Assembly: GCA_026770705.1 (NCBI GenBank)
Contig: JANJGN010000026.1
Span: 31,248,001 to 31,312,000 of the forward strand
Length of the DNA stretch: 64,000 nucleotides
Reading direction: 5' to 3'
Source of the DNA: Isurus oxyrinchus
Lineage: Eukaryota
Notes under the pieces: generated by a model
The model's database searches: none
Told to the model about the DNA's origin: nothing
The model's input: only the letters and a program-made list of their open reading frames with translations
Position numbers and translations under genes: made by a program
Shown: positions 2,929 through 44,555 of the stretch, one piece after another
How positions within the stretch are numbered: position 1 is the stretch's first letter
Layout: the number at the start of each line of letters is the position of its first letter

Positions 2929-3357
2929 AGCTCCAGGGCACAGAAATACACGGCGCTTTCGGAGAGAAGTTCCCCGGCGATATTTAAAGGAGACGCTATA
3001 TTTCCTTTGTGAAAATAACCAGAAAATCTGTCTGGTTAGCTTGGAAGCCTTTCTTCATTCCCCAAGCTTCAGTAAATGTCTCGCAGCTTCCCCGGGATAC
3101 TGGACATACCAGAACAGAGTTGTGACAGGGCCGGCTGGCGAGTAACTGCAGCCCAGTATTATGCTCTGTCCTTCCATTATCATTAATGCAGACGGATCCT
3201 GGGACATTGAATCTGTGCCATCCGACCCTGTAACACATATACAGAATGGTTCAAAGCCGGCGAGGAAATACAACCCCCGTAAACACAGTGACTATGTAGA
3301 CATAGACTTACCAGGCAGCAAGGCAATTATTGGGAGTAAGGGACATGGTGAGCTCAT
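2929..3357 (-). pseudogene. TCR alpha/delta-like V pseudogene (leader + V exon)
   Basis: Leader 3357-3312 (MSSPCPLLPIIALLP, GT donor); V exon 3227-2929 with LGCSYS, LFWYVQYPGE, DRFSG and ESAVYFCAL; frameshift and TAA near CDR2; RSS CACAGTG (2928-2922), 24-bp spacer, GCTGAAACC (2897-2889). Confidence 0.9.
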
Positions 3358-4672
3358 GGTATCTGGTTTCGAGCTCGACAAAAAAATCACAGGTTCATCT
3401 TAATATGTTGGTCCCTCTAGTCTGATATTAAAGTGAAACCCAGAACAGGATCGGGCTCCACTTATTGAGGCAGAGAGGGGCGTTTCCCAAGGAGAAGATT
3501 CACTTGTCTGTCCGAGCTGATGACAGCTACGCACCAATGAATGTGAGCTGCGGATAGTTTAATTCACTGGGTGGTTCCCCCTCCCTCGCTCTGACCTTCT
3601 TAGCTTGTCTGTCCCTTTGCCTTGATGTCTCTCTGCTGGGTAAATCTCTCCTCGAAGTAAACACTCCCACCGCAGTAAAACACGTGGAAATAAATACGTT
3701 AAATTGGGAGTGAAGACAGAATAAGACAAATCGGTGAGCAAGCACTGACGCCTAAACACCTCCAGGCGTCGTGAAAGTTGCTTTGGAGTTTTCGCATTTA
3801 TATCGGACTTAAAGTCAATCAATAAATTTAGTTTCATCGTGATCAGAGGCCATGGGGACAGCGCTGTAGAGAAAAACTGCACGGGAATGGAAAGGAAATA
3901 TGAGGCAAATTTGTTGGACCAGATGATGGATCAAAATAAAATCCACAAGTGTTTCGATGACTGAGGGTGGCTCCTTTGTGCTGCATTTGTATGTTTCACA
4001 GACATGTCATTTGTGTTTGAGTGGATATTTAGATTTGTGTCCAAAGCCCCTTGTTGCAGCTGATGAAGTGACAGATGTCGCACTAAAGTGCTGCATATGA
4101 ATGCGCCAGGTAATGCTGGCTTGCAAACCCATTTGTGTGGGATTAACTGAAGGTTCGTTGGATTAAAGTCTCCCGGGTGTTCCTGCCTCCTTGGTGTAGT
4201 GCCAGGTCACCGTTCAGCCCCTCGAACTCATTGGCTTTACTGGTCAGGCTGAGGGACTGACGGGAAGTGCCATCTCTCAAACACCACCCGGTACAAACAC
4301 ACGCACCGACCTCCCAGTTCATTATTGCGGGGATTTGAAGGCGGCAGCGTAACTGGCAGAAAGAAAAGCTCCCCTCCCCCACATCTGTACCCCAGAGTAT
4401 TGCAGGAGGACCTTTCACATCCGGATCACAATCCAAATGAAGAGTCAAAAAATTGCAGTCTCCTTTTATAAACCTGTCTCTTAGTCACAGACTTAGCCAG
4501 CGACCCGGGAACCGTGCGGCCCATCAATGATCAGAGCGGAACTGTCCTGTGCAAATCAACTCAGCACCCACTTAAATATTTAGGTCCAGCTCTGAGGTCC
4601 GGTCTCCCAGTGCATTCCGGGCCAACAGTCTCCAGCTCCCCGTCATATAAACCCTCAGCTCCAGGCAGCAGA

Positions 4673-5155
4673 ACGATTGGAATTCTCTTTCTTTTCAGCC
4701 TGTGTGTCCGTTTACCCCGTGAGTACCGATCAAACAAACCGACATTGTGTTTGTTTAATATAAAGCTGCCCGAGTCCATCCCAATTCCAGACAATGTCCG
4801 GAGTTTTGACCCCGCTCTGTGGTTCGGCTCTGATGGTCCATTAAACTCTCTCTGTTTAATTTGCAGGCTCTTTCAGTCAGTCAGTGGTACAGACCCCGGC
4901 AGCGGTGACCAGGAAGGAGTGTCAGTCTCTCACCATCACCTGCGTTTTCTATGGTGGCTTTTTCTCTCGTCCTTTGACGGGTGGGGATTTCTTCAGACAA
5001 ACCCAGACCGGGAGCGGATCTCCAGCGAGGGGAGATTTGTTGTGTCGGTGAATAAAGCAGAAAATACATTTTCGCTGGAAATTAGGGATCTGAGAGTTGG
5101 AAACACCACCACCTATTACTGTAAAGCTCTGTATATGTACAGCATGCGGTACAGT
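4673..5155 (+). pseudogene. NAR-TCR V (IgNAR-like), cassette 1; apparently germline-joined V-D; disabled
   Basis: Leader 4673-4718 starts with ACG (paralog has ATG); V exon from 4867 reads QTPAAVTRKECQSLTITC...ISSEGRFVVSVNKAENTFSLEIRDL...YYCKA; 10-nt deletion near 5012; V runs straight into the D 3' RSS; TATA at 4646. Confidence 0.9.
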
Positions 5156-5183
5156 CAGAGTGGGGCAGACCGGAGCAAATATC
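5156..5183 (+). other. D-type 12-spacer RSS with mutated heptamer
   Basis: CAGAGTG, 12 bp, GCAAATATC; aligns with CACAGTT-12-GCAAATATC 3' of the D in cassette 2. Confidence 0.85.
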
Positions 5184-5535
5184 TCTGTACGATCACTGTT
5201 TAAATTCTCTGGGCCCGGATAGGAAATTGTCGGGTTGATGTTATTATCACTGTTATCTGGTTATATTTCTTGTAATTTCCACCATTCAGTTATCTTTCTT
5301 TGATAATTTCTCGGTTTATATGAAGCAAACATCTCCTTCCCGGGGCCATTTACTCAGAGCTCAGGGCCTCACAAAGAACAGTTTGAACCGACAGAAGTTT
5401 TGAAACATTGAATATTTTACACTTATTTTAATCTGCTCAATAACTGGGCAGTTTCTACTGTCTGATGATGATTTCCCTGCAGTTTGAGGTGTCAATGATT
5501 GTTGTACTGGAGAGACTGAAAGCGGGGTCACTGTG

Positions 5536-5588
5536 CTGAAAATAAGATTATGTGGATGGATCCGGGATGGTGGTGACTGCCACAGCCG
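5536..5588 (+). other. NAR-TCR J segment, cassette 1
   Basis: RSS GATTGTTGT (5497-5505), 23 bp, CACTGTG (5529-5535); encodes ...DYVDGSGMVVTATA; donor GTAAGT at 5589. Confidence 0.88.
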
Positions 5589-6499
5589 GTAAGTGACTCC
5601 AAACACCGCCGAGTTACAGCCTGTCCCGGGTAATGTTCACCATCAGTTTATTATTGATATCAGTGGAGTTTGGGTGAGATGTGGGAGTTGACGGAATCTG
5701 GACCATTATTGGTTTAACGGGCACATCGGTGACAACATCAACATCATGGACTCTCACACTCTGAATCGTTTTTAATGAGCGCAGATTGTCGACAATCCGG
5801 ACTCCACTCCTGGTGTTAACTGTGACCGAGGGCACTCTGTCTGTCCCTTAGAGCCTGGGAGTGAAGTGACAGATCTCTCTACTGGGCAGCAGATTGCAGT
5901 CCGACCTGAGCAATGTGAATGAGGTACCGCGTGAATAAACTCAACACAACCAAGGCCAGTTCGGATACCTGCAGCGGCTCGTTCAATACCTGACCCGGGA
6001 GAGAAACGGGAGAGTGACACAAGGGACTTCAGATATAAGACACCTCCAAATGGAATTTTATGATTGGGCAACCAGTGACTAAAATAAGTGACATTGACCC
6101 CGCCACTTCTCTCAATTGCCATCATATAACCAATCACTTTCCTCCTTTTCAGCTGTCAGATGTGCAGGTTTGGAATTGCAGACACTTCTCTATATTGAAT
6201 CTAAATGTTTGAGAAATGGGATTGCTGTAATTTATCTGTGTCCCTGATTACTGTTAATTAAAACAGCACAGCGCACTGAGAGACTGAGGATTGTGTATTA
6301 ATCTTATAAAGGAGAACAGGGACCTTAGGAAACATTTACAATCTGGGGGAATGTTCATTTCGAAGCAGCAAGAAATAATTAATCGCAAGGGAGAGAAGGA
6401 TTGGAGGGTCTCTGGCCCATTCAAATCAAATTACAATCCGAGCCCATGTTAGTTGGTGAGGTGCATGGAGGAATGACTGAAATGGACTCCAGTTTGGAA

Positions 6500-7020
6500 T
6501 GTTGTGTAAAGTTATGATCTCTTTACTTAAGGAAGGACCTCCTTGTCTTGGAGCTAGTGCAACAAAAGTTCATCAGCCTGATTCGTGAGATAAAGGGATT
6601 GTCCTGTAAGAGGAGGTTGAGTAGCCTGGGCCTATGTTCCCAAGAGTTTAGAGGAATGACATGTAATTTCATTAGAACATTTAACTTCCAGGACAGGATA
6701 GATTCTCGGTGGGTGTTTCCCCAGGGTGTTAAGTCCATAACTACGGGTCACAGTTTCAGAGTAAGGATTCGGCCATGAGAAATGAGAAGAAGAGAAATTT
6801 ATTCAGTGAAATCATTGTTGTGAATCTGTGACATTCTCTACCTCAGAGAGCTGTAGTTGAGTGTATTAAAGGAAGTGTTGAATGGATTTTGGGATGCTAA
6901 AAGAATCAACGGATATGGGGACATTGCGCCAAAGCGATGTTGAGATCGAGAATGAGTCAGGCTATTACTGAATGGCGGAAAAGTTTTGAAAGGTAACATG
7001 GTCGCTCCTGCTTCTGTTTG
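6500..7020 (+). mobile_element. CR1 LINE 3' fragment shared with cassette 2 (19330-19870)
   Basis: CR1 ORF2 C-terminus-like peptide (LELVQQKFISLIREIKGLS...RLSSLGL). Confidence 0.7.
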
Positions 7021-7539
7021 TTATATTAACTGCTTTGATCTGTTACACCTCTGAGAAAAGAAATCAGGAACAATCCACCTCTTTGTGCAGAGGTTAAACA
7101 GGCCGGGTCTCTTGTATCTGGAGAACAGAGAAATAGGAGGAGAATTCATAGAAATCGTTTAAGCAATGGACGGGTTCATTGGAGTATTTGTGGAATAGCC
7201 GTTTATTTGTGGGTGAAGCTAGTGCCATTAACATAAGATAGTCAAAAACAGAACAAATAAAGACACGATGAAGAAGATGTGTAAAAACAGGTAAGTCAAA
7301 ATGTGGAACTTGCTGCCCAGGGAGTGGTTGGAGCAAATAGTATTGATACAATTATGGGAATACTTGAAAATACAGAAGGGAGAACGGAACAGACTGGCAC
7401 GGGGAGCTGACTAGAAATTGACAATTAGATTTCAGGCAGATGGGGGCTGGTCTGCAGTAAATATACAGGGATAAATCATTTGAGCAGAATGGATTATTCC
7501 TCTTCAGGCAGATTCTGTGTAAAGTAAAACTTAGGGAAA

Positions 7540-9060
7540 ACTCCAATCAGACCCGTCAGTCAGTCAATGGGCGGAAGAAATTTGCAATTGTCCGAAAGGC
7601 AGACGAGGGAGTTCCCAGTAAGTAACAGTAAAACCACTGCAGAAACTGAACAGACTGAAACCAACAGACAACTGAAAGAATTTAGGACAAGTTCCCACGA
7701 TTGCTACCTTCCCATGCAAGATGTGCAAACAGTACAAAGGAAATGGAAAAATAAAATGAAACTAAATGTAAATATATGAAAATACATGTAAAGGAGAAAA
7801 ATGAAACCTATTGATGGAAGAAATTATGGTTTTTTTTGCAAACAAATACTGATTGAAAAACATTCAATTAATCCTTCACCGTACGATTACTTTTACAGAA
7901 CCTTGGTCTCCTGAATTTAAGCTACTACAATCTGAGTATTAGTAATAATGATAGCAATTTGTATCAGTGTTCCCACATTGCAGACGATGACGCGTGTGAT
8001 CAGCCACATCGGCCTCTCAGAATTCATGTTGCACGCAGATCACTGCCACTACCTGCTGAAGGGACATCTCATTTGGTTAAATGTGTTTTAAAATACAAAT
8101 TGTATTTGTGGTAGATCTGAGGCAAAACATGTTTATGTCATGCGCTGTTCTGCGCTGTTTCAGGGCAGTAGTATTCAAAATCGGAAAGAATTTGGACAAT
8201 ATTTAACGTGCAAAACTTGTGTATGAAGCAGAAAGGTCTTTGTAGATCTTTCTTTTCTTTTCCGATGAATCAGATGAGGTTTATGTCTCCGATTGCACAT
8301 CGGGGATCAGCGGCAGCTCATCGGGAGCTACTCAAAGGTCGATTCAACAATCGACCACGTTTGAGTGATGTACGTTCGGCCGAAACCGTGTGAGGCCTGT
8401 GTTCCTAGGCCATTTTCTGCCCTTTGGGTAGCTGCCTGGATTATTCAGCAGCCACGTGTCCTACTCCCCTTCAGTTTCCAGGAGCAAGGCTTATTTCAAC
8501 AGAACGTGTTGTTTGATCCAGGGCAGTTTATACACAATGACAAGATTTCACCAAGGCAGTGAGTGTGAACTTTAAACCATGTCCCAAACACAGTGTCCAC
8601 ACCCATTTCATTGTCCCTCTGAGTGTGGCTTCATGTTTTATCACTGGAACTGGAAACTGAATTATCCAGACCTGGAAATCAAACATTGCTTGCTGGAATC
8701 ATCATTTCACCATTACTCAGTTGGACCGAATAGCGTTTTCATCTTCTGCAGATCCTGTACAATGTAAAACCTAGTGAAATCTCCGCCCAGAGCACCCGGG
8801 ACAGAATCAGTCAATGGGCGGAAAGAACTTAAATTGTCAGAGAGCCGGAAGAAGCAGTTCCCAGTAAGTAACAGTAAAACCACTGTGGAAACTGAACAGA
8901 CTGAAACAAACCGACAACTGAGAGACTTTGGGACAAGTTCCCACGATTGTAAGAAGCGCGAACAGCACAAAGGAAATGTAAAAATGAAGGGGAACTGAAT
9001 GTAAAGATGTCAAGTTAAATGGAAATGGAATAAATTAGACCCTGTTGATGGATGAAAATA
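7540..9060 (+). repeat. Direct repeat of a ~290-bp unit (7540-7830 and 8770-9060)
   Basis: Shared cagtcaatgggcggaa...gaaactgaacagactgaaac...ggacaagttcccacgattg; a single inverted copy lies at ~18590-18890. Confidence 0.8.
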
Positions 9061-9722
9061 GGGAAATGGAAGGAACGGCAGATTGAAACTCCGGAGCAGT
9101 GTTAAACTGCAGTAAATAATTGACCTTTGACCATTGATGTTCACTATCAGTTTGGCCCAATCGGATCATTAAGCTCATCGCTTTTTGTTGGATCTTGCTG
9201 TGTGCAGTGATGCAACGCAGCTGTGTCGCTACCGATTAACTATTTTTGGTAATTGATTACGTCATTGATAATAAGACATTCCTTCGGGTTTGTCTCTCAC
9301 CAAAGAAAATACAAACAGAAATTTAATATACATCACAGAAACATCCAACACGGAAGGATGACATTCAGGCACTTGCGCATTGGCTGCCCCTTTAAAAGTG
9401 CAATCCAATTGTCCCCGTTAACCAGACATTTTCCCCGTAGACATGCATTTATCCCTGTTCCAGCACAGATCCATCATCCTTTTGAAAGTTACTGTTGAAT
9501 CTGCTCCTATCACCCATTTTCACCGTGCATTCCAGATGTGAATAACTGGCTCTGCAAAATAAATTATCATCCTCATGTATCATCTTGACCACATTTAATA
9601 ACCGTGAATACAGTTCGAACAGGCACCAAGTGAAGAAAACCACAAAATCAAGAGCTATTAACAAATTCCCCCGGGCAAACAGTGGTTACGCCGACAAATA
9701 ATGTTTATTTTTGACCCTACAG

Positions 9723-10022
9723 ATTCCAGTTCTCTGGTATCCCAGAGTCCACATTTCCAAGCCTCTGCTGCCGGTGACCTCGTTACTTTAAACTGTGAAT
9801 ACTCAGGGTTCTGTCAGTACACAGTACACTGGTACTGTCAATCTCCAGGACAGGAATACCTGCTTGAGCGACACACTTCAGGAGAGGAGAAGAAAGAAAA
9901 CGCTGCCAGGGGGAGAATTTTTGCTTCTATCAATTCGGCCGAGAAAAGTAGCCAGTTAAAGATCTCCAAACCACAACTGAGCGACTCCGCTGTGTATTAC
10001 TGTGCACTGAGTCGACGCATAG
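9723..10022 (+). CDS. Leaderless supporting TCR-delta V of NAR-TCR cassette 1
   Basis: AG acceptor at 9721-9722; open frame with TLNCEYSGFCQYTVHWY (CDR1 Cys) and DSAVYYCALS; no leader exon seen nearby; RSS CACGGTG (10023), 23 bp, ACAAATACA. Confidence 0.88.
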
Positions 10023-12574
10023 CACGGTGATACAGAGCATGGAGACATCTGTACAAATACATGAACATGGTGGGGATTACACTGCCTCCATAACTCACCA
10101 TGATGCCCGGTGGATCCTGAAACAAGGGCCCCATTTCCTCAGTGGGTTGAATGGTCATGAATATCGGTGTCAAACAGGTAAGGCAACATGTTATCAAAAT
10201 AAGAAACACAGTAACAACAGAGTCTCAGGCCCACAACAGTAACTTCATAAATCCTGGACCACATAGTATGGGACACAACACACCCTCCGCGTGAACAGTC
10301 GAGTTACATGAGGGAACCATCTAAAAAATGCACAGGAATTTACATCTCTGCGAGGCATGAGTGGAAATGGTAGCTTCGATGACTGACTGACAGGTTGTAT
10401 ATCAATTTTCATCCCCCCCCTCCTACCCAACCAACACCACCCCCGCCCCCAAATCAACATCACAGAAGTAGATCACCAGGTCATTCTCACCTTGTTGTTT
10501 ATGGAAGCTTTCCGTGTGTAAATTGCCTGTCATGTTTCCCACATGAAGACACTCTAGAGCCTTTTTAGACTGTTAAGTGTTTTGTAAAGTTCTGATGTCA
10601 TGAAAGGCGCTTTATAAATGCACGCTTTTTTTCTTTCTGTATTGCAAATCAGAGCCGGAAGATGGGACTGAATTCGCAACCTGAGCGCAGTGTTAACTGT
10701 TATATTAAAACTCAGTATTTGGACCTTCTCTCTCTCAGTGTCTCTCTCTCTCTCCTTTTCCATTTTTCTCGCTCTCTTTGAGTGTCTTTGTGTCACTCTG
10801 TAGCTCTTTATTTCCATATCTCTATCTCTGAATTGATTTGCGTCTTGAAGGGAGTTGAAGAAAGAAATATGCAGACAAATTAAGGAATATAGTAAACAGA
10901 ATATTAATAATAGTGCTTGCACTACCTAGTATTACTTCACCAGAAGTATGTAAAGGGGATAAGGGAATAGAGTTCCCACAGGGTGCACTGTTGTCTTTAT
11001 AAAGCAAAATGCAAAAAACGAAGAACAGCAAGGTAACGGGGAGTGAAACAAATTAGGGTGAGAAGTAAAGCCAGAAGAACAACTGGGCATTGCTGACCAT
11101 AACGTAGTAATGCTTTGAGATGGGGTTAGGGGTAGAATAAGTTTTGAAACCAACTAATCATCTAGTTGATTGAACGCTGGGCAGGTAATTCCAGTGAAGC
11201 AGCATGGTCCAGTGATTGAGAAAATTAACATAAAATTGAATACATGAATGCTCTTGTGCGTTTGAACTCCATTTCTGCGAGTTTCTTTACCAGTGCTGCT
11301 CCCACTTTTGTTGATTAAGGAAAATGGAGGTAAGGTACTGAAGTTCTTGGGCAGATCAAAGATTCTCTTAGTAAATGTCGAGCAGACTCGAGGGGCAGAA
11401 TGGCCTTCTCCTGTTCCTATACAGGAATATTATGTCTTCAGATGCAGAGATAGGTTTTTCCGATGGAGAGAGATGCAGAGAGGGGGAGATTCAGATACAC
11501 AGAAAGAGAGAATGTTGGACTGTCAGGGAAATAACGAGCAATTTATGTAAACAAAGACATTTTGGCAGAGTGTGTGACAATGAGGGATGAGTTGAGGGGT
11601 TTAAAAGGCAATCATGGAAAATTGGTGCTTGAAGACAAATGGGATTTAATTGAAGGCAATTGATTAAAAACATTAAATACAGTAGTGTTTAACAGAGCAA
11701 TGACATAAAATGGGCGGGTGTATGAACCCCTTCTATTTCTGTGCTACATCTGCCCATTTTCTCATAGTTCAATAAGAACAACTAATAAATAAAAGGAGGT
11801 GAGGGGGAATGCTAGAGGCTGCCGCTCTCAATAACCACACTTTTCTAACCTTCTAACCCCAGTGCCTGAGAAACGTGCAGCTTTTAACCGTTTTCACTGT
11901 TCAGTTTCCTTATTTCAAACATCAAAGTAAAACGAGTGGTTTCTGCAGTGCGGTTGCCGACAGCTCGATGTCCGTTGATCAGTAGAACCGGATTTAATCA
12001 CATTGAAATCACACAATGGGACAAAATTAAAGCACAATTAGCTGGAAATTAATAACTGAACCTGAGGGTTTTATAGAATAAGCTGCGGACTCTCTCTCTC
12101 TTTGTCTGTCTGTTTCTTTCTGCCTCTATATCTTTCTATATCTGTCCCTTTCTCTGTCTGCCCCTCTCACGCTTTGTCAATCGCTTTCTCCTTCTCCATT
12201 TAAATCTCTGGCTTTGCCTGTGCCTCCCTCCGTTGTCTCTCGCAGTCTCACCCTCCCTCTCTCTTTCTCTCTCTCACGCACACACTTTCTGCTCTCTGCG
12301 TCAATCTTTGTCTCCATCCTCTGTATCTTTCAGTGTCTCGGCATATTTTCCTCTCTTTCTCTCCCTCTGTCTCTCACTTTTTCTCTTTCTTTCCACTTTC
12401 CTTGGCTTTCGCTTTCCCTATAACAGGCTCTACTTTCACTGTTTCCAATCGGAAGTTACTGGTTCTTTCAGAGGCGAAGATTCAGAGTTCGCACACTGAA
12501 CTCCCATCATTGAGGTTATATGGCAACCCACCGATAGTTTCCGTACAGGGCCTATATTAGTTTGTATCACTGCG

Positions 12575-12875
12575 AATATTCAGCACACAATAGTAAGTCC
12601 CACTGGCACTCAGCTCAACATCTGTCAGGGGTAAGCTGAAAAAACGGTCAGATACTCGGGGTATTGAATAGACTCGGCCTCCAACACGCCCTGTTTCCTG
12701 CCCTCCCTCAGAATTCATTTTGATTAAAAGCACCGGCGCCTCCCCCGTTCTTTGTGCTAGAACAGATCATATCGGCAGCTGTCCATGGAGTATGAACAGG
12801 ACAACACCATATGTCCTTCCACTATACATAATACTGATGATGCAGGTTGCTTAATTATATTTGAGCATCACAGAC
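12575..12875 (-). pseudogene. TCR alpha/delta-like V pseudogene
   Basis: VLSCSYSMDSCRYDLF*...GEAPVLLIK...DVELSASGTYYCVLN with stops and a frameshift; RSS CGCAGTG (12574-12568), 23 bp, ACGGAAACT. Confidence 0.85.
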
Positions 12876-12999
12876 CTTCGAATATTCAATGAACAGAATA
12901 CAAATGGATGTTTAGGTCCTAGAGACATCAATGAATGCTCGTTCCTTTCCTTCATCGCACCATCATCGAATGAAGCCATACAGCACATCATGTCTATGT

Positions 13000-13760
13000 A
13001 GCCTCTTTGGTAGGGGCACCAAATTGTTCCCATTCCACTGTTTGCTCCCCTTTGCCTTGCAAAATTTCCCATTTCAAGCAGTTACCCAATTATGTTTTTG
13101 ACATTTGATATTGAAGCTGCTTCCACCAACATATCCAGCAGCTTATTCCGCAGCACAACAACTCAGAGTGCAAATAAATGGCTGCTCGGATTCCCTCTGA
13201 TTCTTTTGTAAACGAATTTAAATCCAAGTCCTCTGATTATGGAGCTTTCCACCACTAGATGCAACTTCCCTCATTTATTCAACTAAAACAGTTAATAATT
13301 GTCAATATCGCAAACAAATCTCCTCCCAATCTTTTATGTTGTACAGAGAACAGCCACAGATTCTCCAGTCTCACCACAAAGCTAAAGCCCCTCATCAGTT
13401 GTGCCTTCCAAGTAAATCACTCCCGCACCTTCTCCAAGACCCTCAAATCATTTATCGTGTGTGGTTCAGATATTCCTAGATAGTAGTCCAACTGAGACCT
13501 TACCAGCTTTGTAGAAATGTTTAGCATAGCATCTTTTTCCTCTTGATAAAAGCAAGAACTTAAAATGTTCTTTACAGGATTCTCAGCCATCACTGCCAAC
13601 TTCAAAGTTTTGAGCACATTGCACCGTATCCATCTCTCTGTTCCTACAGCGCTGATCAAATTGCATCATTTAGTTTATATCGGATATCCTCATTATTCCC
13701 ACCAAAATGCATCATTTCACAAATACCATATGATACAGTCCAGGCAAATTGAAATGTCCA
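13000..13760 (-). mobile_element. Decayed CR1 LINE fragment
   Basis: CR1 ORF2-like remnant LVRSQLDYY...LEKV on the - strand. Confidence 0.55.
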
Positions 13761-14084
13761 TGTCCTCCTGAAGTTTTACATTTGCCCCATTGTTTATTAC
13801 AAAGCGAGATCCCCGTCATCTGCAAAGCCTGAACCAACTATACCAGGGATAAGTTATTACATTAATATGCTTATTGGATTACGGTTTACAAATAATTATT
13901 ATGCATACATCACTGGCCCAAGTACCGAAGTTTAAGGAAAGCAGTTGTAAGCTTCATCTAAGTTAAAATGAACAATTGATGACGACCATCCATCTATCCA
14001 GCCGTCATTCACTTTCACCCCTTTGCATCCGCCCGCACATCCAGCCATCCATTAATGCATCAGGTCGCCCTTCTATCCATCTCC

Positions 14085-14345
14085 CCTTTCATTCATCCAT
14101 CCATCCATCCATCCTCCTCTCCGTCCTTCCATCCATCCGCCCATCCACCTGTCCCTCCTTCCTTCAGTCCATCTGTCCACCCGCCCACCCATCCATAAGT
14201 CCATCCGCCCATACGTCCATCTGTGCATGCCTCCATCCGGCCATCCATCGTCCATCGATCCATCCATCCATCCATCCATCCATCCACCCGTCCATCCATC
14301 CATCCTTCTGTCCATCCTTCTGCCCATCTGTTCATCCAACAACTT
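14085..14345. repeat. (CCAT)n microsatellite
   Basis: Direct reading. Confidence 0.9.
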
Positions 14346-14469
14346 ATGCATCCGACAACCCACCTAATTTATTATTCCGTTTGTCACACCCTAACCCTCT
14401 TGTTGGTCACACCACAAGCCCTCATTCGTCAGATGCACGTCTATTTCAGGACATGTCTATAGTTTTCTC

Positions 14470-14662
14470 CGCCTTTCTGCTTCTTTCTCTCTCTTTCAAT
14501 TGAGCATCTTCTCTCTCTGTCTCTTTTCCTCTGTCTCTCTCTTTCTTTCTCTCTGTCTCTCTCTCCCTTTCTCTCTGTCTCTCTCTTTCTCTTTCTTCTT
14601 TCTCTGTCTCTCCTTCTATGTCTCTTTTTCTCTTTCTTCTATCTCTATTTTTTCTTTCTCTC
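14470..14662. repeat. CT-rich simple repeat
   Basis: Direct reading. Confidence 0.9.
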
Positions 14663-14664
14663 CC

Positions 14665-15530
14665 ACAGATTTACGCCCCTGCAAATTCTCGCCCTTGCAA
14701 ATTCCCCCTCCCCGCAGTTTTCCACCAGTGCAAAATCCCCTTTGCAGGTTCTTTCTACCCCACAAATCCACCCTCCCCCCCAGCAAAATCCTCCATGTGC
14801 AAATTTCCCCCACCTGCAACTTCCACCCTGTGCAAATTCCCTCATGTGCAAATACCACATCCACAACTTCGACCTCCCCCCGCACATTCCCCTCTGTGCA
14901 AATTACAAACTGTGCAAACTTACTTCCCCACAAATTCCCCTCCGCAAATTCAGCCCCTGTAGGTTCTATTCTCCTTTCCAGCCCCACAGTTTCCCCACAT
15001 GCAAAATTCTCTCCCCGCAAATTGGCCCTGTGCAAATTTCCACCTCCCGCAAATTTCTCCCCCATGCAAATTTACTCCCCCTGAAAAATTTCCCCCTGCA
15101 AATTTCCCAACTTGCAAGTTTGCACTGCAAATTTACCCCTCCAGATTATCTCCCCGCTGCAAATTCCCTAGTGCGATTTTCCCTCTGTGCAAACTCCCCC
15201 CTCACAAATTTTCCGCTGTGAAAATTTCCCCCACCTTAAATTTCTCCTTGTACAAATGTCTTCCCGCCCGGCAAATTCCCTCCTGTGCAAATTCCACACC
15301 CACAAATTCGACCCATGAAAATTTCCCCCATGTGCCAGTTTCCCCCGTGCAAATTCTCTCTCCCCGCAATTTTCCACCTGTGTAAATTCCCCCTGCAGAT
15401 TCTGTCACCCTGCAAATTCCACACCGTGCAAATTTATCCCCCGCAAATTTACCCCCCAGGCCCAAATTCTCCCCTCCACAAATTACCACCCCCCCCCCCC
15501 CCCCCCCACCCTGCAATTAAATTCCCTAGG
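14665..15530. repeat. Degenerate minisatellite, ~15-20-bp unit containing (T)GCAAATT(T)CCC
   Basis: Many recurrent gcaaatt motifs separated by C runs. Confidence 0.85.
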
Positions 15531-17607
15531 TTCATCATTCTGGACGGCAGTTTGAAATTCACTGCCCCACGCCCCCCTTTTTGCAATAATTTCTGTTTGC
15601 CAAATGAGTTTTTTCAAATAGATACCAACAGGTTATACTCACTAAGTTCCTCAGTCAGTTTGGTTCCTGTTCCGAATATTAATGGTCTAAAAACACTCGA
15701 ATACACAATGACAAAACTCCATCTGAAAACTCAATGACACGCCAATAAACTTCAAATGGCATTCGGCACTCTTCTGGCCAGATCACCAAGTCCCACCACA
15801 TAATGCTATTTTCTGCAGTTTGCTTGGGTTAAACAGTTACTCCTCAAACCCTGCAATCTTGGAAATGATTCGCAGCTCTCCTTCCATTTTGCACCATAAG
15901 AAATCATGGCCGCGATTTCCCAATTGACAAATCCAAGCGAGGCAGAGGGTGGGGAGAATCCTCTTTTTTACTTTCAAACGAAATTCTCAACGCATTACAA
16001 ATATGCTGCAAGTGGGGTTTCAGTAGAATTGGAAGCAAAGACAATGTACATCCCCCACCCCACCATCGGCAACTGTTCCTCAACACTGCGATATTTGATG
16101 CAATATATGGCTGCCTGGGTTAATGGAGCAAAGGGTTTTGGGCCACATTACACAATGCAACATAAACATGACTTCTAATTTCCCGGAGTCTCCTTAACAT
16201 TAGAATTCAGACACAGGCAGAAGCATACACACACAAAACAACTAACACCTTCAAGTGGCACTTTAAATACTCTGGTCCTCGTCTCAGGGTTAAAAGTCGG
16301 CCATTTTGGCTTAAGTTGAGGAGATATCCCTTCACTCAGAGGGCTGCGGGCCTTTGCAATTCTCCAGCCCAGAGGGTTCAGGATGTTCAGCAGTTGCCCA
16401 TATTCAAAATGGTGATTGATGGATTTTCATTTGGTGATGGATAGATATTTTGGGAGGTGGCGCTAAAGGGATCAATGATATTGGGACAGGCCAAGAGGAC
16501 ATTGAGGTCAAATCTCAGTCATGATCTTATTGAACTGCTCAATGCTGCTCCTATTTATTATGTCCTTAATGGTTCCCACCGTCCAGGCTGTACCATCCCA
16601 CGACCCCAACACCGAACCCTGACCGACCCTGTACTTTGGGGACATTGAAGCTTCGAATATTTCGAGACTGGAGCCCTTAACCAGTGCAGTGCACAACCCC
16701 CCAGCTCAGGTGAAACTTCCCCCGCTAGTGCATACACACACTGACAGACAGACAGACACACACACACATGCACACACACACACACACGCACACGCACACA
16801 CAGACACACACGCATACACGGACACACATTCAATAATGCCTGACTTGGTGATTAAAGGCCTGTTAAAGCCTTGGGGGAGTGGGGGGGACTATTGGAATCG
16901 CGATGCACAAGGTTTGGCATCTACTTTCTGGGATAGATCCAATCAATCGGCACCCCCTCCCTCGCACCCACCCCCATCCGACCCCCAACGACAGCTCCTC
17001 ACCCCAAATCCCGTTTACATCACTGACACATGAATTAACTCCGTGGCTTAACATCTAAGTCAGTTCAGAGGAAGGAAAGAGAATGAAAATTAAATAAATA
17101 AAAGATGTGGAGTGATCCACAATGACCGAATTACTGGTTTCCACAATCAACCTTGTCCCGTTGTTCCGTATGTTGCACGCGGTTAAACCCGATCACAAGA
17201 TCCATGTTACCCACCCCCTCCCCATCTCTGGGCAAAGCTGCTCCCTTGTCTGGGAGATGGATCAGGCGGTGAATACACAGGACGTGACTTTATTATGTGG
17301 TGCTGGGTGCATTGGGGAGGGTACAAATCCCTGAATATCCAGGAGGAGAAAACAGGGCGATACTGACAGAATGGGAAAGGGGGTAAGGGTCCCGGGCCGG
17401 GAGGCTGTGGGGGTGGTGATGTCGGGTGGACCCAGGTTAACATCACGGGGTGGGGAGGAGGGAGGGGGGCTGTGTGTTGATAGCAGTTGGTACCATCCCG
17501 TAGGCTATTGCACGAGTGTTGAAGGAGATTCAGCTACTGTTGGTCCTTCTGTAATCCCACCATGTTCAGGCTTTTCTACAGCTCTCTCCATTCTCTGTAT
17601 CACTGTG

Positions 17608-17913
17608 CTGCACGCCGACTCAGTGCACAGTAAGACACAGCGGAGTTGCTCCATTGTAGTTTGGAGATCTTTAACCGGCTGATTTTCTCGACAGATTCGA
17701 TAGAAGCAGAAATTCTCCCCTCGACGGCGTTTTCTTTATTCTCCTCTCCTGAAGTGTGTCTCTGAAGCAGATATTCCGGAGCCTTTCCGGGCGACAGACG
17801 ATACCAGTGTACTGTGTACGGACAGAACCCTGAATATTCACAGTTTAAAGTAACGGTGTCACAGGCAGCAGAGGTTTGTACTGGCAGATCCCGGGAAATC
17901 CTGGAACTGGAAT
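17608..17913 (-). CDS. Leaderless supporting TCR-delta V of NAR-TCR cassette 2
   Basis: Acceptor at 17915-17914; open frame TLNCEYSGFCPYTVHWYRLSPGKAPEYLL...NSAVSYCALS; RSS CACAGTG (17607-17601), 23 bp, AGAAAAGCC. Confidence 0.88.
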
Positions 17914-20770
17914 CTGGAGAATCAAAAAAAATGAACATTATCTTTTTGTTTATCCACTGTTTGTCCAGGAGAAATTGTCGATCGCTTGAATAGCTCTGCT
18001 TTTTGTGGTAATTTTATTTTTTGAAGCCTGTAAGAACCGTATTCACTGTTATTAAACTATGATAAAGTAGGGAATGAAGTGATTTTTTTTTCCATAGCGA
18101 ATTCTCCTCATGAAGAATGCACCGTTTGAATTGGTGGTGGGAACAGATTCCATTGTAACTTTGAAGCAGGTAATGGATCTGTACTGGAAATGTAAATAAA
18201 AATATAGAGCGATGGAGAAAGTTAATGGGCCGTGGGACCAATTGGTTTGCACTTCTAATGCGTCGGCGCATACACGACGGGCCGGATAATTCTATGAATA
18301 AAATTACATCCCTGTGTGTATTATCCCCAGTGAGACACAAACCCGAGGGAATATTTTATGACCAATGAGGCAACCGATTTCCAAAAAAGAAAAATGTTTG
18401 TTAGAGAGAAATACAGCTGTGTGGCATCACAACAAGACCCAACACAAACCGATGGGAATCATCAGCACCAATTGGGCCAAAGCGAGAGTAAACATCAGTG
18501 GTCAAACGTCAATCATTTCTTGCGGCTTATAAGTGCTCTGGAATTTCTCTCGGCCTGGTGCTCTATTTCTCTAAGTTTTATCAATAGGGTCCAATTTTCT
18601 GCAGTTTAGTTCATTTGAAATATTTACAATTAATTTTATTTTATTTACTTTATTTCACATTTCCTTTTTTCACATTTACTTTGTGCTGTTTGCGCTTTTT
18701 GCAATCGTGGGAACTTCTCCCAAACTCTCTCAGTTGTCTGTTGGGTTCAGTCTGTTCAGTTTCCGCAGTGGTTTTACTGTTACTCACTGGGAACTGCCTC
18801 TTCCGGCTCTCTGACAATTTCAGTTCTTTCCGTACGTTAACTGACTCTTTCCCGGGTTCACTGGGCGGAGTTTTCCCTCAATTTTACATTATGGAGGAAA
18901 AACAACGCAAAAGAGGAATGGGCCATTCAACCTGTGCATAGACTCAATTCCAACCTAATCCCCACCGAAACGTAACTGACCATTTCCATCCAGCTCCCTG
19001 GGTCGGTCTATTCCGTAAATATATCAGTAATATCTGCAAGCACTCCCTGGGACAGCAAGTTCCATACTTGTCAATGACTTGTCATTGTTAAAATTTATTT
19101 GTCTTAATATTCTTCTTTGTCCTGTTAATATTTTGATGGTCCATTGCTTTGGCCTCAGCCACAAATAAACAATTTCACCAGACTAAAACCGCTCATTGTT
19201 TGAAAGGTTTCTATTAATTTTCCCAGTGTTTCCCTTTTGTCCAGAAAAAAGAGGCCCAGCTGGCTTCAACTTCCCAGAGAGATGTGGAATGCTGCTGATT
19301 TCTTTTCTCAGGCCTATAGGAAATCAAAGTAGAGAATCGAATAGAAGCAGGAGGCGCCAGATCACCTTTCAAACCTGCTCAGCCATTCAGTAATATGGTT
19401 GCTGATTTTCCACCTCAACATCACATTCCCGCATTCTCCCAATATCTCCTGATTCTGTTAGTATCCAAAAAATCTGTCGAATATTGCCTTGCATACACGG
19501 TGATACTGAACACCCACTGCTCTCTGAGTTACAGAATGCCACAGGTTCGCACCAATAGTTCTTCTCAAGATTATTTTCCGTTTCTCAGTTCTAATGGATG
19601 ACCCTTTCTTCTGAAGCTGTGACCCTGAGTTCTATACTCCTCAGCCTGGAGAAACTGCGACCCAGTATCTGCCCAGTCAAGTTCCCTGAAGAATATTATA
19701 TGTTTTCATTAGATCACCTCTCATTCTCCTAAACTCTAGGGAATACAGGCCCAGACTACTAAATCATTTCACAATTGGCAACCTCTTCATCTTAGGAATC
19801 AGTCTGGTGAGCCTTTGTTGCACTCCTTCCAAAGCAGATGGTTCTCTCTTCAGTAATGAGACCAAAACTTTACACAGCATTTCAGTCTATTTCAGTCCTT
19901 CCCTCCATAAAGCTCACCCACCACGTGGTCGGATTGTACTTTGGAAGGCGCCCAGAGGTCATACAATCCTTCTCCCCCTTTCGCTGAGCTATTACTTGCT
20001 GGTTCTAAATGAACATGGCCCCAGTTTATAATTGTTCCCTATGTTCTTGTTCTCCTTTATAAGATTAATGCATTATCCTCACTATCTCACTGCATTTTGT
20101 TGTTTCCATTAACAGTAATCAGGGATACAGAAAAATTACAGCAATCCCATCTCTCAAACATCTACATTCAAGATAATAAAGTGTCTGCAGTTCCAAACTT
20201 TCACATTTCGGTCTGAGGTCAGAAAGGGAGGAAAGTAATTGGTTTTCTGAAGACAATTGAAACAAACGGCGGGGGCATTGTCACTAATTTCAGTCACTGA
20301 TTATCCAATAATAAAATTCCATGTAGACCCACATCAGGACCTCTTATATCTGAAGTCCATTGTGTCACTTGCTTGTTTTACTCCCGGGTCAGGTATCCGA
20401 ACTGGCCGCAGTTATGTTGAGTTTATTCACCCTGTTCCTCATTCACATTGCGCAGCTCGGACTGCAAACTGCTGCCCAGGAGAGAGATCTGTCACCCCGC
20501 TCCCCAGCTCTAAGGGACAGGCAGAGCTCCCTCGGTCACAGTTAACACCGGGAGTGGAGTCCGGATTGCCGACAATCTGCTCTCATTAAAAGCGATTCAA
20601 AGTGTGAGAGTCCGAGATGTTGATGTTGTCCCCAATGTGCCCGTTAAACCAATAATGGTCCAGATTCCGTCAACTTCCACATCCCCCCAAACCCAACCGA
20701 TATCAATAATAAACTGACGGTGAACATTACAAGGGACAGTCGGTAACCCGGCGAGGTTTGGAGTTATTAC

Positions 20771-20814
20771 TAGCTGTCCTGGGTCCATCCACAGAATAAT
20801 ACTTAGTAACCCAC
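20771..20814 (-). other. NAR-TCR J segment, cassette 2, internally deleted
   Basis: Heptamer 20815-20821, 23 bp, nonamer 20845-20853 (plus-strand CACAGTG...ACAACAACC); encodes KYYSVDGPR-----TA, 15 nt shorter than J1; donor GTAATA. Confidence 0.82.
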
Positions 20815-21197
20815 CACAGTGACACCACTCTCAGTGTCCCCGGTACAACAACCACCGACAACTCAAACTACTGGGGAATCATCATCAGACAGTAGAAACT
20901 GCCCAATTATTCAGCGGATATAAATAAATAAACAATATTCAATATTTTAAAGTCTCTGTCTGTTCAAACTGTTCTTTGTGAGGCCCTGAGCTCTGAGTAA
21001 ATGGTCCCGGGAACGAAATGTTCTCTTCATATAAACCTAGAAAAATGATTAAAGAAAGATAACTGAATGCTGGAAATTACAATGAAATGTAACCAGATTA
21101 TAGCAACAATAACATCAACCCGACGTTTCACTGTCCGGGACTGGAGAATTTATATTGTGATTGTGGAGAGATATTTGCTCAAGTCTCTTCAACTGTG

Positions 21198-21214
21198 ACT
21201 TCCCCATCCAAACA
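21198..21214 (-). other. NAR-TCR D segment (TGTTTGGATGGGGAAGT) with 12/12 RSSs
   Basis: 5' RSS is plus-strand CACAATG (21215), 12 bp, ATGAAATCC; 3' RSS is CACAGTT (21197-21191), 12 bp, GCAAATATC. Confidence 0.85.
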
Positions 21215-21608
21215 CACAATGTTACAAGTCAGCATGAAATCCCCTGGGTACTTGGTGCGCTGTGGGGATACTAGGTAAACAGCGGGGACTGCGGTTCCCG
21301 GTTCCAGCTGTTAGACCAGGATCACATCTGGTGTTAGAGGATTGTAACTGGGATTAGTCATTCCCAATCCCCATTCACTGACACCAATCCCGGCAAAGAC
21401 ATCGCCATCCGCACACACTCGACATTTATAAAACTCAAGATGTTAACGGCAATAATCCAATCTCATTATACACTAGACTGTGGGGCAGGCGGTGTGAGGC
21501 GGAACCGTGGGGGGTTTAACTGCAGATTAACTCCGTTTTTTTATTTGATTCTGTAATAATCTGCAGTGAGAGTTTTTATATCGCGGGAAACCGAGACCCG
21601 TCGCCGTG

Positions 21609-22091
21609 TTCTTCGTACTCGTACTGAGCTTTACAGAAATAGGTGGCGGTGTCTTCAACTCTCACATCCCGAATTTCCAGCGAAAATGTATTTTGTGCTT
21701 TATTCAACGACTCAACAAATCTTCCTCCGCTGGAGATCCGCTCCCGCTCTGTCCCGGTCTGGGTTTTTCTGAAGAAATCCCCGCCCGTCAAATGTCGAGC
21801 GTAAAAACCACCATAGAAAACACAGGTAATGGTGAGAGACTGACACTCCTTCCTGGTCACAGCTGCCGGGGTCTGTGTCAATGACTGACTGAAATAGCCT
21901 GGAAATTAAACAGAGAGAGTTTAATGGAGCATCAGAGCAGATTCACAGAACGGGGTTAAACCCCAGACATTGTCTGTAATTGGGATGGGCTCGGGCAGCT
22001 TACTATTAAATCCACACAATGTCGGTTTGTTTGATCGGTACTCACGGGGTAAACATTCACACAGGGTGAAAACAAGAAATATTCCTATCAT
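21609..22091 (-). CDS. NAR-TCR V (IgNAR-like), cassette 2, intact
   Basis: Leader 22091-22046 (MIGIFLVFTLCECLP, GT donor); V exon 21898-21609 open, with extra FR1 Cys (KECQSLTITC) and GGRFVESLNKAQNTFSLEIRDVRVEDTATYFCKA; RSS CACGGCG, 22 bp, ATAAAAACT. Confidence 0.92.
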
Positions 22092-23711: not shown

Positions 23712-23746
<35 letters not shown>

Positions 23747-24090
23747 CTTTCGCAATCGACCCTCTGATGGACACTGCCTGAATCACACACACGCACACAC
23801 AACATTAGAAATCTACCCTCTGCTGGACACTGTCATTACCACATGCACACACAGACAGCCCTTGAGCAATCTACCCTCTGCTGGGCACTGTGATCATGAC
23901 AAACACGCACACCAACCCACACATCTTAAGCAATCTACCCTCTGCTGGACAATGTCATAATCACACACATACACAAACACATACACACACACACACACCT
24001 TTAACAATCTACCCTTTGCTGCGCAGTGTCATAATCACACACAGACAACTTTAGCAATCTACCCTCTGCTGAACACTGGCGGAATCATAC
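22600..24090 (+). repeat. ~1.5-kb segmental duplication (other copy ~41690-43230), ending in a CA/aatctaccctctgctggacactg minisatellite
   Basis: Colinear similarity, e.g. gaaatcacaagg..., ctttcaggaagaaatggcgaagattcaggttc. Confidence 0.85.
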
Positions 24091-42930: not shown

Positions 42931-43000
<70 letters not shown>

Positions 43001-43125
43001 CTTTGGCACCTTACTCTCTGCTGGACACCGTCATAACCTCACACACACAGACACAAACACACACCTCTGCAGCAATCTACCATCTGCTGAACACTGCTAT
43101 AATCACCTCATACACATATACAGAA

Positions 43126-43168
<43 letters not shown>

Positions 43169-44419: not shown

Positions 44420-44555
44420 NNNNNNNNNNNNNNNNNNNNNNNNNNNNNNNNNNNNNNNNNNNNNNNNNNNNNNNNNNNNNNNNNNNNNNNNNNNNNNNNN
44501 NNNNNNNNNNNNNNNNNNNNNNNNNNNNNNNNNNNNNNNNNNNNNNNNNNNNNNN
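44420..44555. other. Assembly gap (136 N)
   Basis: Direct reading. Confidence 1.

What the first reader, a model, noticed from the sequence alone, without database searches (positions are those of the whole stretch)
5119..5183. Apparently germline-joined V-D in a NAR-TCR cassette
Seen: in cassette 2 the order is V end (TGT AAA GCT CAG TAC GAG TAC GAA GAA), 22-RSS, intervening DNA, 12-RSS, D (ending ATGGGGAAGT), then CACAGTT-12-GCAAATATC. In cassette 1 the V end (TGT AAA GCT CTG TAT ATG TAC) runs via AGC into ATGCGGTACAGT and directly into CAGAGTG-12-GCAAATATC, after which the two cassettes align again. The ~394 bp missing from cassette 1 corresponds to the interval bounded by the V heptamer and the D 5' heptamer. 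Established: RAG-mediated germline joining is documented for shark Ig clusters, and marsupial TCR-mu carries a pre-joined V. Inference: this is a heritable RAG coding joint in a shark T-cell receptor cassette, which I do not recall being described for NAR-TCR. It is now frozen by the CAC>CAG heptamer change, the ACG start and a frameshift.
Basis: partly seen in the sequence, partly recalled or inferred. Interest (0 to 1): 0.85.

Follow-up and report, generated by a model that had tools for sequence, protein, structure and literature searches.

The report
Germline V-D joint in shark NAR-TCR
In one of two shark NAR-TCR (T-cell receptor delta) gene cassettes, the V and D segments are already fused in inherited DNA where the RAG recombinase would cut, but the cassette is now a dead pseudogene, so this is a fossil of germline recombination and not a working gene.

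Summary
The window holds two inverted NAR-TCR cassettes: C1 at 4278-10081 (+) and C2 at 22488-17550 (-). C2 has the split layout: V, 22-bp-spacer RSS, 5' D 12-RSS, 17-nt D, 3' D 12-RSS, J 23-RSS, J, then a leaderless supporting V-delta.

C1 aligns with C2 on both sides but lacks exactly the 394 bp from the V heptamer to the 5' D heptamer. It keeps 33 nt between the Cys codon and the surviving D 3' RSS. Unjoined relatives have 22-24 nt there.

No RSS remnant, target-site duplication or signal joint is present. A contig from a run filed under a second sample and study spans the joint with one mismatch. Depth there is single-copy. A somatic or assembly origin is therefore unlikely.

C1 is dead: ACG replaces ATG, a 10-bp deletion shifts the V frame, and the D heptamer reads CAG.

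Best reading (about 0.8): a heritable RAG coding joint, as known from shark Ig clusters. Breakpoints resolve only to about ±10 nt.

Earlier notes of this scan (unchecked here) report similar joints elsewhere in this genome. I found no paper describing this for NAR-TCR. [quoted passage not shown]

The parts
4673..4718 (+). C1 leader exon homologue with ACG in place of the ATG start (4673-4675); GT donor at 4719
   Evidence: aligns with the C2 leader (ATG at 22091-22089). The leader intron 4719-4866 is retained and is 88.5% identical to C2's.
4867..5146 (+). C1 NAR-type V exon. A 10-bp deletion between 5008 and 5009 shifts the frame. Cys codon at 5120-5122. The V-derived part ends somewhere in 5140-5146.
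   Evidence: The deletion lies between 5-nt direct repeats (CGGGA). The second half scores just under the Pfam V-set cutoff (24.6 vs 26 bits).
5141..5155 (+). Junction segment (AGCATGCGGTACAGT): the last V bases, possibly P/N bases, and the remnant of D. The reading frame stays open through it.
   Evidence: The 33 nt from Cys to the heptamer compare with 22-24 nt in 19 of 20 unjoined relatives. There is no CAC at the canonical position.
5156..5183 (+). Surviving D 3' 12-RSS, inactivated: heptamer CAGAGTG (CAC>CAG), 12-nt spacer, nonamer GCAAATATC
   Evidence: It is homologous to the C2 D 3' RSS at 21197-21170, with an identical nonamer. RAG's requirement for CAC is cited from the abstract of PMC12711392 (seen).
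5497..5588 (+). C1 J 23-RSS (nonamer 5497-5505, heptamer CACTGTG 5529-5535) and J segment 5536-5588 (FR4 ...YVDGSGMVVTATA; donor GT at 5589)
9723..10061 (+). C1 leaderless supporting V-delta exon (9723-10022; AG acceptor at 9721-9722; Cys in CDR1) with its 23-RSS (10023-10061)
21609..22091 (-). C2 leader (ATG 22091-22089), leader intron and intact NAR V exon (21898-21609): the split reference copy
   Evidence: The best solved relatives are shark VNAR domains, E about 1e-17.
21215..21608 (-). C2 interval from the V heptamer to the 5' D heptamer (394 bp): the V 22-bp-spacer RSS, unique DNA and the 5' D 12-RSS. This is the piece absent from C1.
21170..21214 (-). C2 D segment (21214-21198, 17 nt) and its 3' 12-RSS (21197-21170)
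20771..20853 (-). C2 J 23-RSS (20853-20815) and J (20814-20771), which lacks 15 bp of FR4
17569..17914 (-). C2 supporting V-delta exon (17914-17608) and its 23-RSS (17607-17569)

Best explanation
C1 is a NAR-TCR cassette whose V and D segments were joined in the germ line by RAG-mediated deletional V(D)J recombination. RAG cut at the V 23-type RSS and at the 5' D 12-RSS. The roughly 394-bp signal-ended interval was lost. The two coding ends were joined with a net loss of about 8 nt and little or no added sequence.

The product was a partly joined 'VD-J' cassette. At first it could still have joined to J through the D 3' 12-RSS. It then decayed, or was already decaying: the start codon became ACG, a 10-bp slippage deletion shifted the V frame, and the remaining D heptamer mutated from CAC to CAG. 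It is now a non-functional relic.

Shown here: the structure, the loss of both RSSs, presence in a run filed under another sample and study, and the lesions. Inferred: that RAG was the agent, that the event took place in germ cells, and the order of events.
For: (1) Two independent alignments place the only large gap in the V-D-J unit at the 394-bp heptamer-to-heptamer interval of C2.

(2) A breakpoint scan gives its best score with V trimmed by 5-6 nt and D by 4-5 nt. Every near-best solution lies within -6..+9 nt of the V border and inside D.

(3) Family norm: 12 of 14 NAR V sequences that read in frame into their RSS have exactly 8 codons between Cys and the CAC; five others have 22 nt; C2 has 24 nt. 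C1 has 33 nt and no CAC at +22 to +24. Its V is therefore full-length and followed by 9-11 extra nt.

(4) The RSS that follows in C1 is homologous to C2's D 3' RSS (nonamer 9/9), and the flank beyond it aligns with C2's D-J interval at 84%.

(5) The 12/23 rule is respected.

(6) There is no 3-5-bp duplication flanking the C2 RSS pair (AAGAA against TGTTT) and no signal joint in the window. This points to deletion in C1, not insertion in C2 or inversion.

(7) The leader intron is retained, so this was a DNA-level event and not retrotransposition.

(8) Reads: a 162-nt contig of run X5 (sample S2, study P2) covers 5022-5183 with 1 mismatch and no gap. No joint, insertion or listed loose end falls at 5133-5156 in any of the four runs. 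Depth in the junction bin equals the single-copy flanks (X1: 280 against about 200-270; X3: 103 against about 106-130), while the V-exon bins are 15-40 times deeper because of paralogues.

(9) Precedent: shark Ig clusters are partly (VD-J) or fully joined in the germ line by RAG-like activity, judged by the same criteria (PMC2193156; PMC4279169).
Against: - The exact breakpoints cannot be fixed. A solution that keeps 9 nt of the V RSS and cuts 14 nt into D scores almost as well (42.5 against 43.5).
- The 15-nt junction segment has no significant similarity to C2's D.
- C2 is about 15% diverged, so it is only a proxy for the unjoined ancestor of C1.
- The tissue and individual behind the read sets are coded. 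Contigs of S1 and S2 share variants against the window, so the two samples may be related, or the contigs could come from a near-identical paralogue.
- No orthologous locus from another species could be examined.
Confidence: 0.8

Rival explanations
1. A RAG-independent deletion (replication slippage or end joining) happened to remove about 400 bp between V and D.
For: Breakpoints are resolved only to about ±10 nt, and a solution with ends inside the V RSS and inside D scores nearly as well. The junction segment is not demonstrably D-derived. C1 carries another, clearly slippage-type deletion of 10 bp between CGGGA repeats.
Against: Both ends fall within roughly 15-nt windows around the two RAG cleavage sites. 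With one or two large indels in about 5 kb of aligned cassette, I estimate the chance of this at about 1e-4 or less. There is no microhomology at the inferred ends, unlike the 10-bp deletion. V is full-length by the family norm and no CAC is left.
Confidence: 0.1
2. The joint is somatic: a T-cell V-to-D rearrangement captured by the assembly, or an assembly collapse.
For: The tissue of origin of the assembly and of the runs is unknown to me. V-to-D joints are normal in T cells.
Against: A contig from a run filed under another sample and study carries the same joint with 1 mismatch in 162 nt. Depth at the joint equals single-copy depth in three runs, and no unjoined alternative, joint or insertion is reported there. 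A polyclonal T-cell population would put any one joint at a vanishing frequency. The joined copy carries inherited-type lesions along its length (ACG, a 10-bp deletion, CAG).
Confidence: 0.04
3. C1 shows the ancestral state (a V followed directly by a 12-RSS), and C2 gained the 394-bp RSS-bounded piece by insertion of a signal-ended fragment.
For: The 394-bp piece is bounded by inverted heptamers, as a RAG-transposed fragment would be.
Against: There is no target-site duplication at the C2 borders. All other family members seen read from V straight into a CAC heptamer. For P0008 a 22-nt spacer and an ACAAAAACT-type nonamer can be deduced, and for C2 they are seen directly. C1's V-to-heptamer distance is 9-11 nt longer than the family norm. 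NAR-TCR V domains are reported to be made by VDJ rearrangement (PMC1845163).
Confidence: 0.03

Closest known systems
Germline-joined (VD-J, VDJ, VJ) immunoglobulin clusters of cartilaginous fish (Lee et al. 2000, PMC2193156; review PMC4279169)
   Same: The RSSs are removed completely. Coding ends are joined with small losses and little or no N sequence. The joint is inherited and seen in a run filed under a second sample. It is a partial 'VD-J' state, and split genes are the ancestral form.
   Different: The locus is a NAR-TCR (TCR-delta) cassette, not an Ig cluster. This copy is a pseudogene. Germ-cell origin and population frequency were not tested by Southern blot or PCR, as was done for the NS4 light chains.
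Marsupial TCR-mu pre-joined V-mu-j exon (Parra et al. 2007, as summarised in PMC7615758)
   Same: A pre-joined V element in the germ line of an atypical three-domain TCR-delta-like chain. NAR-TCR and TCR-mu are regarded as convergent.
   Different: V-mu-j is a complete joined exon, functional and invariant, and is thought to have arisen by retrotransposition. Here only V and D are joined, the leader intron is kept (a DNA-level RAG event), it is the membrane-distal NAR V that is affected, and the gene is dead.
Canonical doubly rearranging NAR-TCR cassette (Criscitiello et al. 2006, as described in PMC1845163 and PMC5931798)
   Same: A leader plus NAR-type V with an a-b-loop Cys and no WYRK Trp. 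A D with 12-RSSs on both sides, a J with a 23-RSS, and a leaderless supporting V-delta with a CDR1 Cys. C2 shows all of these.
   Different: In C1 the V-D step has already been carried out in the germ line, and the cassette can no longer rearrange or be translated.
Partially germline-joined VH of the opossum (Wang and Miller 2012, cited in PMC7615758; not read here)
   Same: A partly recombined V gene in the germ line outside the classic shark Ig examples.
   Different: It is an Ig heavy-chain gene of a mammal that is reported to be transcribed and to recombine. The comparison rests on the citation only.

Membership tests
NAR-TCR cassette | The membrane-distal V is of the NAR type | tested here: met
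   For C2's V, the best matches among solved structures are shark VNAR domains over the full length (E 1e-17 to 1e-14). Pfam V-set match. C1's V is 86% identical to C2's in DNA.
NAR-TCR cassette | Cys in the a-b loop and no canonical Trp of the WYRK motif (PMC1845163) | tested here: met
   Both cassettes encode ...TRKECQSLTITC... and ...GGDFFR(K/Q)TQ.... The criteria are quoted.
NAR-TCR cassette | A linked supporting V-delta without a leader and with a conserved Cys in CDR1 | tested here: met
   Exons at 9723-10022 and 17914-17608 start at AG acceptors in phase with the J donor (G|AT = Asp). They encode ...CEYSGFC(Q/P)YTVHWY... and end in 23-RSSs.
NAR-TCR cassette | Separate V, D and J segments with RSSs (somatic VDJ rearrangement of the NAR V) | tested here: not met
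   Met in C2. In C1 the V RSS and the 5' D RSS are gone and V is fused to D. C1 is a derived, partly joined member.
NAR-TCR cassette | Expressed as a TCR-delta chain | not testable with these tools
   No RNA run holds the stretch. No C-delta lies in the window.
Germline-joined antigen-receptor gene made by RAG (criteria of Lee et al. 2000) | No part of either RSS is left at the joint | tested here: met
   The 394-bp heptamer-to-heptamer interval is absent. There is no CAC at the canonical V end and no nonamer-like remnant.
Germline-joined antigen-receptor gene made by RAG (criteria of Lee et al. 2000) | Coding-end processing typical of V(D)J joining (nibbling, P nucleotides, little N) | tested here: inconclusive
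   There is a net loss of 8 nt relative to C2's V plus D (33 against 41 nt). A GCATGC palindrome sits at the putative V end, but palindromes are common here and the unjoined ancestor is unknown.
Germline-joined antigen-receptor gene made by RAG (criteria of Lee et al. 2000) | The segments joined carry a 12-RSS and a 23-RSS | tested here: met
   V RSS spacer 22 nt; 5' D RSS spacer 12 nt in C2.
Germline-joined antigen-receptor gene made by RAG (criteria of Lee et al. 2000) | The split form is ancestral; no target-site duplication in split copies | tested here: met
   All 20 relatives that can be read run from V into a heptamer. The C2 borders, AAGAA and TGTTT, are not duplicated. No tree of all cassettes was built.
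Germline-joined antigen-receptor gene made by RAG (criteria of Lee et al. 2000) | Present in more than one individual at germline dosage | tested here: met
   An X5 contig (sample S2, study P2) spans 5022-5183 with 1 mismatch. Depth is single-copy in X1 and X3 (sample S1). Independence of the samples from each other and from the assembly is not certain.
Germline-joined antigen-receptor gene made by RAG (criteria of Lee et al. 2000) | Present in non-lymphoid or germ-cell DNA | not testable with these tools
   Run and sample identities are coded, so the tissue is unknown.
Marsupial TCR-mu type pre-joined V (retrotransposed) | A complete V(D)J exon, made through an RNA intermediate | tested here: not met
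   Only V-D is joined. The D 3' RSS, the D-J interval and the leader intron are retained.

The most novel reading that the evidence does not exclude
RAG has acted repeatedly on the NAR-TCR/TCR-delta locus in the germ line of this shark lineage. Partial joints such as this one would be intermediates, or failed side products, on a path that also yields fully pre-joined NAR V exons. Those exons could be co-opted as invariant extra domains. That would be a shark parallel to marsupial TCR-mu, reached by RAG and not by retrotransposition.
Probability: 0.3. Interest if true: 0.7.

Novelty: new member of a known kind. Interest (0 to 1): 0.45.

Why it matters
Germline RAG joining is textbook for shark Ig clusters. 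For T-cell receptors, the only germline-joined V on record in the papers I could read is marsupial TCR-mu, which is thought to be retrotransposed.

A RAG-type V-D coding joint fixed in a NAR-TCR cassette would show that the TCR-delta-linked part of the shark antigen-receptor complex has also been open to RAG in germ cells. It would add a datable fossil of such an event. It would also give a concrete, PCR-testable locus for asking how often germline recombination reshapes antigen-receptor loci, and in which lineages.

This copy itself has no function.

Tried and rejected
- **Cross-species loci.** The orthologue and nearest-paralogue tests were not possible.
- **Joined homologues.** A protein search with C1's joined tail (5003-5200) found no candidate. 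This says nothing either way.
- **Public gene models.** About 70 NCBI models of roughly 230-400 aa from about 16 elasmobranch species look like joined NAR V(D)J plus V-delta. I rejected them as evidence. Their 'CDR3' reads through RSS heptamers: HSD = CACAGCGAC, and SLWW or STV = CACTGTG. The window's own unrearranged J2 translates to VVSLWWVTKYYSVDG. The models I read through are therefore predicted introns across unrearranged cassettes.
- **D homology.** The 15-nt junction segment against C2's D, the V RSS or the 5' D RSS is not significant by shuffling.
- **P nucleotides.** Reading the GCATGC palindrome as P nucleotides is compatible with the data, but I rejected it as evidence.
- **Inversion.** I searched for a retained signal joint (back-to-back heptamers). 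Only V-end 'YCALS' look-alikes turned up.
- **Extra exons.** A tblastn search for pre-joined V exons between J and V-delta in C1 or C2 found none.
- **Literature.** Searches for a germline-joined NAR-TCR found no such report. Criscitiello 2006, Deiss 2019 and Ott 2021 are not held.
- **Reads.** The listed pieces do not show which base differs in the X5 contig, and no listed contig bridges the 10-bp deletion or the ACG.

Full report
**What is there.** A self-comparison of the window finds two, and only two, copies of the unit. C1 lies at 4278-10081 on the plus strand and C2 at 22488-17550 on the minus strand. They are inverted copies about 7.5 kb apart at their V-delta ends (10081 to 17550), which face each other.

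Each copy has:
- a leader exon, a leader intron and a V exon;
- a J with a GT donor;
- 4-5 kb further on, a V exon that starts at an AG acceptor and not at a leader.

**Family.** The upstream V of C2 matches shark VNAR domains best among solved structures, over its full length (E about 1e-17), and it is Pfam V-set. Both upstream Vs have the extra Cys in ...KECQSL... and FFR in place of WYR. Both downstream Vs have a Cys in CDR1 (...SGFCQY...). These are the features listed for NAR-TCR V and its supporting TCR-delta V in PMC1845163. These are therefore NAR-TCR cassettes.

The closest public gene models are from Cetorhinus maximus and Carcharodon carcharias, at 85-93% protein identity. The genome is thus lamniform-like. 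Its identity is not given to me.

**The observation.** An RSS scan finds the full split layout in C2:

| Element (C2) | Coordinates |
|---|---|
| V end | 21609 |
| V RSS: CACGGCG, 22-nt spacer, ATAAAAACT | 21608-21571 |
| 5' D RSS (12-nt spacer) | 21242-21215 |
| D, 17 nt | 21214-21198 |
| 3' D RSS: CACAGTT, 12-nt spacer, GCAAATATC | 21197-21170 |
| J RSS (23-nt spacer) | 20853-20815 |
| J | 20814-20771 |

C1 aligns with C2 through leader, intron and V up to about 5140. It aligns again from the D 3' heptamer (5156) onward at 80-85% identity. The one large gap is the 394 bp of C2 from the first base of the V heptamer (21608) to the last base of the 5' D heptamer (21215).

Between the Cys codon (5120-5122) and the heptamer, C1 has 33 nt. 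C2 has 24 nt (V) plus 17 nt (D). The net loss is 8 nt. The frame stays open through the joint (C K A L Y M Y S M R Y S).

- ACG for ATG at 4673-4675;
- a 10-bp deletion between 5008 and 5009, flanked by CGGGA repeats, which shifts the V frame (two ORF pieces);
- CAGAGTG for CACAGTN at 5156-5162.

**How sharp are the breakpoints?** I scored C1 5090-5200 against every concatenation of a left and a right piece of C2. The best solutions trim V by 5-6 nt and D by 4-5 nt. A solution that keeps 9 nt of the V RSS and cuts 14 nt into D scores only one point less. The 15 nt at 5141-5155 have no significant similarity to D or to either RSS when shuffled. From C2 alone, resolution is therefore about ±10 nt.

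A second line of evidence narrows this. Several public ORFs and gene models read from the NAR V into its RSS:
- In 12 of 14 in-frame cases, exactly 8 codons separate Cys from the His (CAC) of the heptamer.
- Five further cases end ...xQ-stop (CACAGTGA) after 22 nt.
- C2 has 24 nt.

C1 has no CAC at +22 to +24. It runs on for 9-11 more bases before a heptamer that is, by homology, the D 3' one. That is the anatomy of a VD coding joint with a near-complete V end.

**Is it inherited?** I laid Logan contigs of four runs on 3200-7200.
- No run shows a joint or an insertion at 5133-5156, and none of the loose ends listed (97 more were not shown) falls there.
- A 162-nt contig of X5 covers 5022-5183 with one mismatch and no gap. 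X5 is from another sample and another study than X1-X3. The contig bridges V, the joint, the mutated heptamer and the nonamer.
- In X1 and X3 the junction bin has the depth of single-copy flanks. The V-exon bins are 15-40 times deeper because many paralogous V genes pile up there.

The joined arrangement is therefore single-copy and at full dosage. A T-cell joint could not give this.

Caveats: the tissue is unknown. S1 and S2 share several variants against the window, so they may not be independent of each other. A near-identical paralogue cannot be excluded as the source of the contig.

**Mechanism and rivals.** The deletion removes both RSSs and nothing else recognisable, and it pairs a 22/23-RSS with a 12-RSS. 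It leaves no target-site duplication in the split copy and no signal joint nearby. It keeps the leader intron. It meets three of the criteria by which Lee et al. (2000) argued for RAG-like joining of shark light-chain genes in germ cells: complete RSS removal, loss of coding-end bases and no target-site duplication. The fourth, a P-nucleotide signature of a hairpin intermediate, could not be shown.

My confidence in each reading:

| Reading | Confidence |
|---|---|
| Germline RAG coding joint | about 0.8 |
| RAG-independent deletion | about 0.1 |
| Somatic or assembly artefact | about 0.04 |
| Insertion in C2 | about 0.03 |

For a chance deletion, both ends would have to fall in roughly 15-nt windows, which I estimate at 1e-4 or less. 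There is also no microhomology, unlike the 10-bp deletion in the same exon.

After joining, the cassette could still have joined VD to J through its 12-RSS, like the 'VD-J' Ig clusters of sharks (PMC4279169). Today it cannot rearrange, because the heptamer reads CAG, and it cannot be translated. The order of joining and decay is unknown.

**A caution from public annotation.** The cluster of one hit contains a 235-aa Cetorhinus maximus model. A search with it returned about 70 models of roughly 230-400 aa from about 16 elasmobranch species. All seem to encode NAR V, CDR3, J and supporting V-delta in one piece, and some have 'CDR3s' identical between basking shark and white shark.

This is not evidence of germline joining. 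Their CDR3s contain HSD (CACAGCGAC, the V heptamer read through), or xVSLWW or STV (CACTGTG, the J heptamer read through). The window's own unrearranged J2 region translates to VVSLWWVTKYYSVDG. The models whose CDR3 I read through (the majority) are predicted introns laid across unrearranged cassettes; a minority show neither motif and were not resolved.

That claim should be re-checked against this artefact. I did not examine its specific models.

**What is known.** Seven literature searches found no report of a germline-joined NAR-TCR. [quoted passage not shown] PMC12227049 (2025) shows NAR-TCR V genes interspersed with IgH clusters near TCR-alpha/delta in elasmobranchs.

The primary NAR-TCR papers are not held, so priority cannot be settled here.

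Within this scan the thing is not new. Earlier notes report V-D joined NAR-TCR cassettes 11 kb beyond this window, about 4 Mb away and on other pieces of the same genome, and one note counts six. I could not test whether these are copies of one event.

**Verdict.** The finding is a new member (a new locus) of a known kind of event, preserved in a dead gene. Interest is moderate.

Noticed in passing
window 5346-5388 (= 21004-20962); 4710-4750 (= 22054-22014); 5445-5473 (= 20905-20877): Perfectly conserved islands of 43, 41 and 29 nt between the two cassettes. They lie in the D-J interval and across the leader donor and intron, against a background of about 85% identity. They are candidates for regulatory elements of the cassette.
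   Followed up: partly
window 20814-20771 (-): C2's J lacks 15 bp of FR4 (it encodes ...YYSVDGPRTA where C1 has ...YVDGSGMVVTATA) and has a GTAATA donor. The 'intact' split cassette is therefore probably defective as well. This is the subject of another first-stage note (s1-870960).
   Followed up: partly
window 5537-5545 (+): In the FR4 reading frame, C1's J starts with TGA and TAA codons, after a 4-nt length difference from C2. A productive join would need at least 10 nt of trimming.
   Followed up: partly
window 4660-5600 vs 5590-10030 (and the C2 counterparts): The leader-V-D-J unit is more alike between the cassettes (introns 84-88%, V dS 0.16) than the J-to-V-delta intron (77%) and the V-delta exon (dS 0.30). 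This suggests gene conversion or separate histories for the two halves.
   Followed up: partly
proteins P0009-P0083 (public gene models); compare window 20853-20771: Many NCBI elasmobranch models of about 234 aa look like germline-joined NAR VDJ plus V-delta. They in fact read through RSS heptamers (HSD, SLWW, STV). They are prediction artefacts on unrearranged cassettes and should not be cited as joined genes.
   Followed up: yes
window 51300-51680 (+), 31716-31997 (-), 37033-37331 (-), 12560-12715 (-): Further V-set segments. The one at 51300 is confirmed by Pfam. There is also a weak V-like fragment between the two cassettes. This is consistent with a TCR-alpha/delta V region.
   Followed up: no
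window 27040-28191 (+): A 383-aa ORF with a reverse-transcriptase domain (RVT_1, E 3.5e-32): a retroelement fragment.
   Followed up: no
window 7476-7829 and 8717-9063 (C1); 18623-18898 (C2): A roughly 350-bp element is duplicated inside C1's J-to-V-delta intron and is present once in C2. This accounts for about 1 kb of extra length in C1.
   Followed up: no
window 23720-24087 and 42783-43238: Related CA-rich minisatellites with a period of about 56-58 bp, on either side of the V region.
   Followed up: no
window 44420-44555: A run of N (a gap or masked stretch).
   Followed up: no
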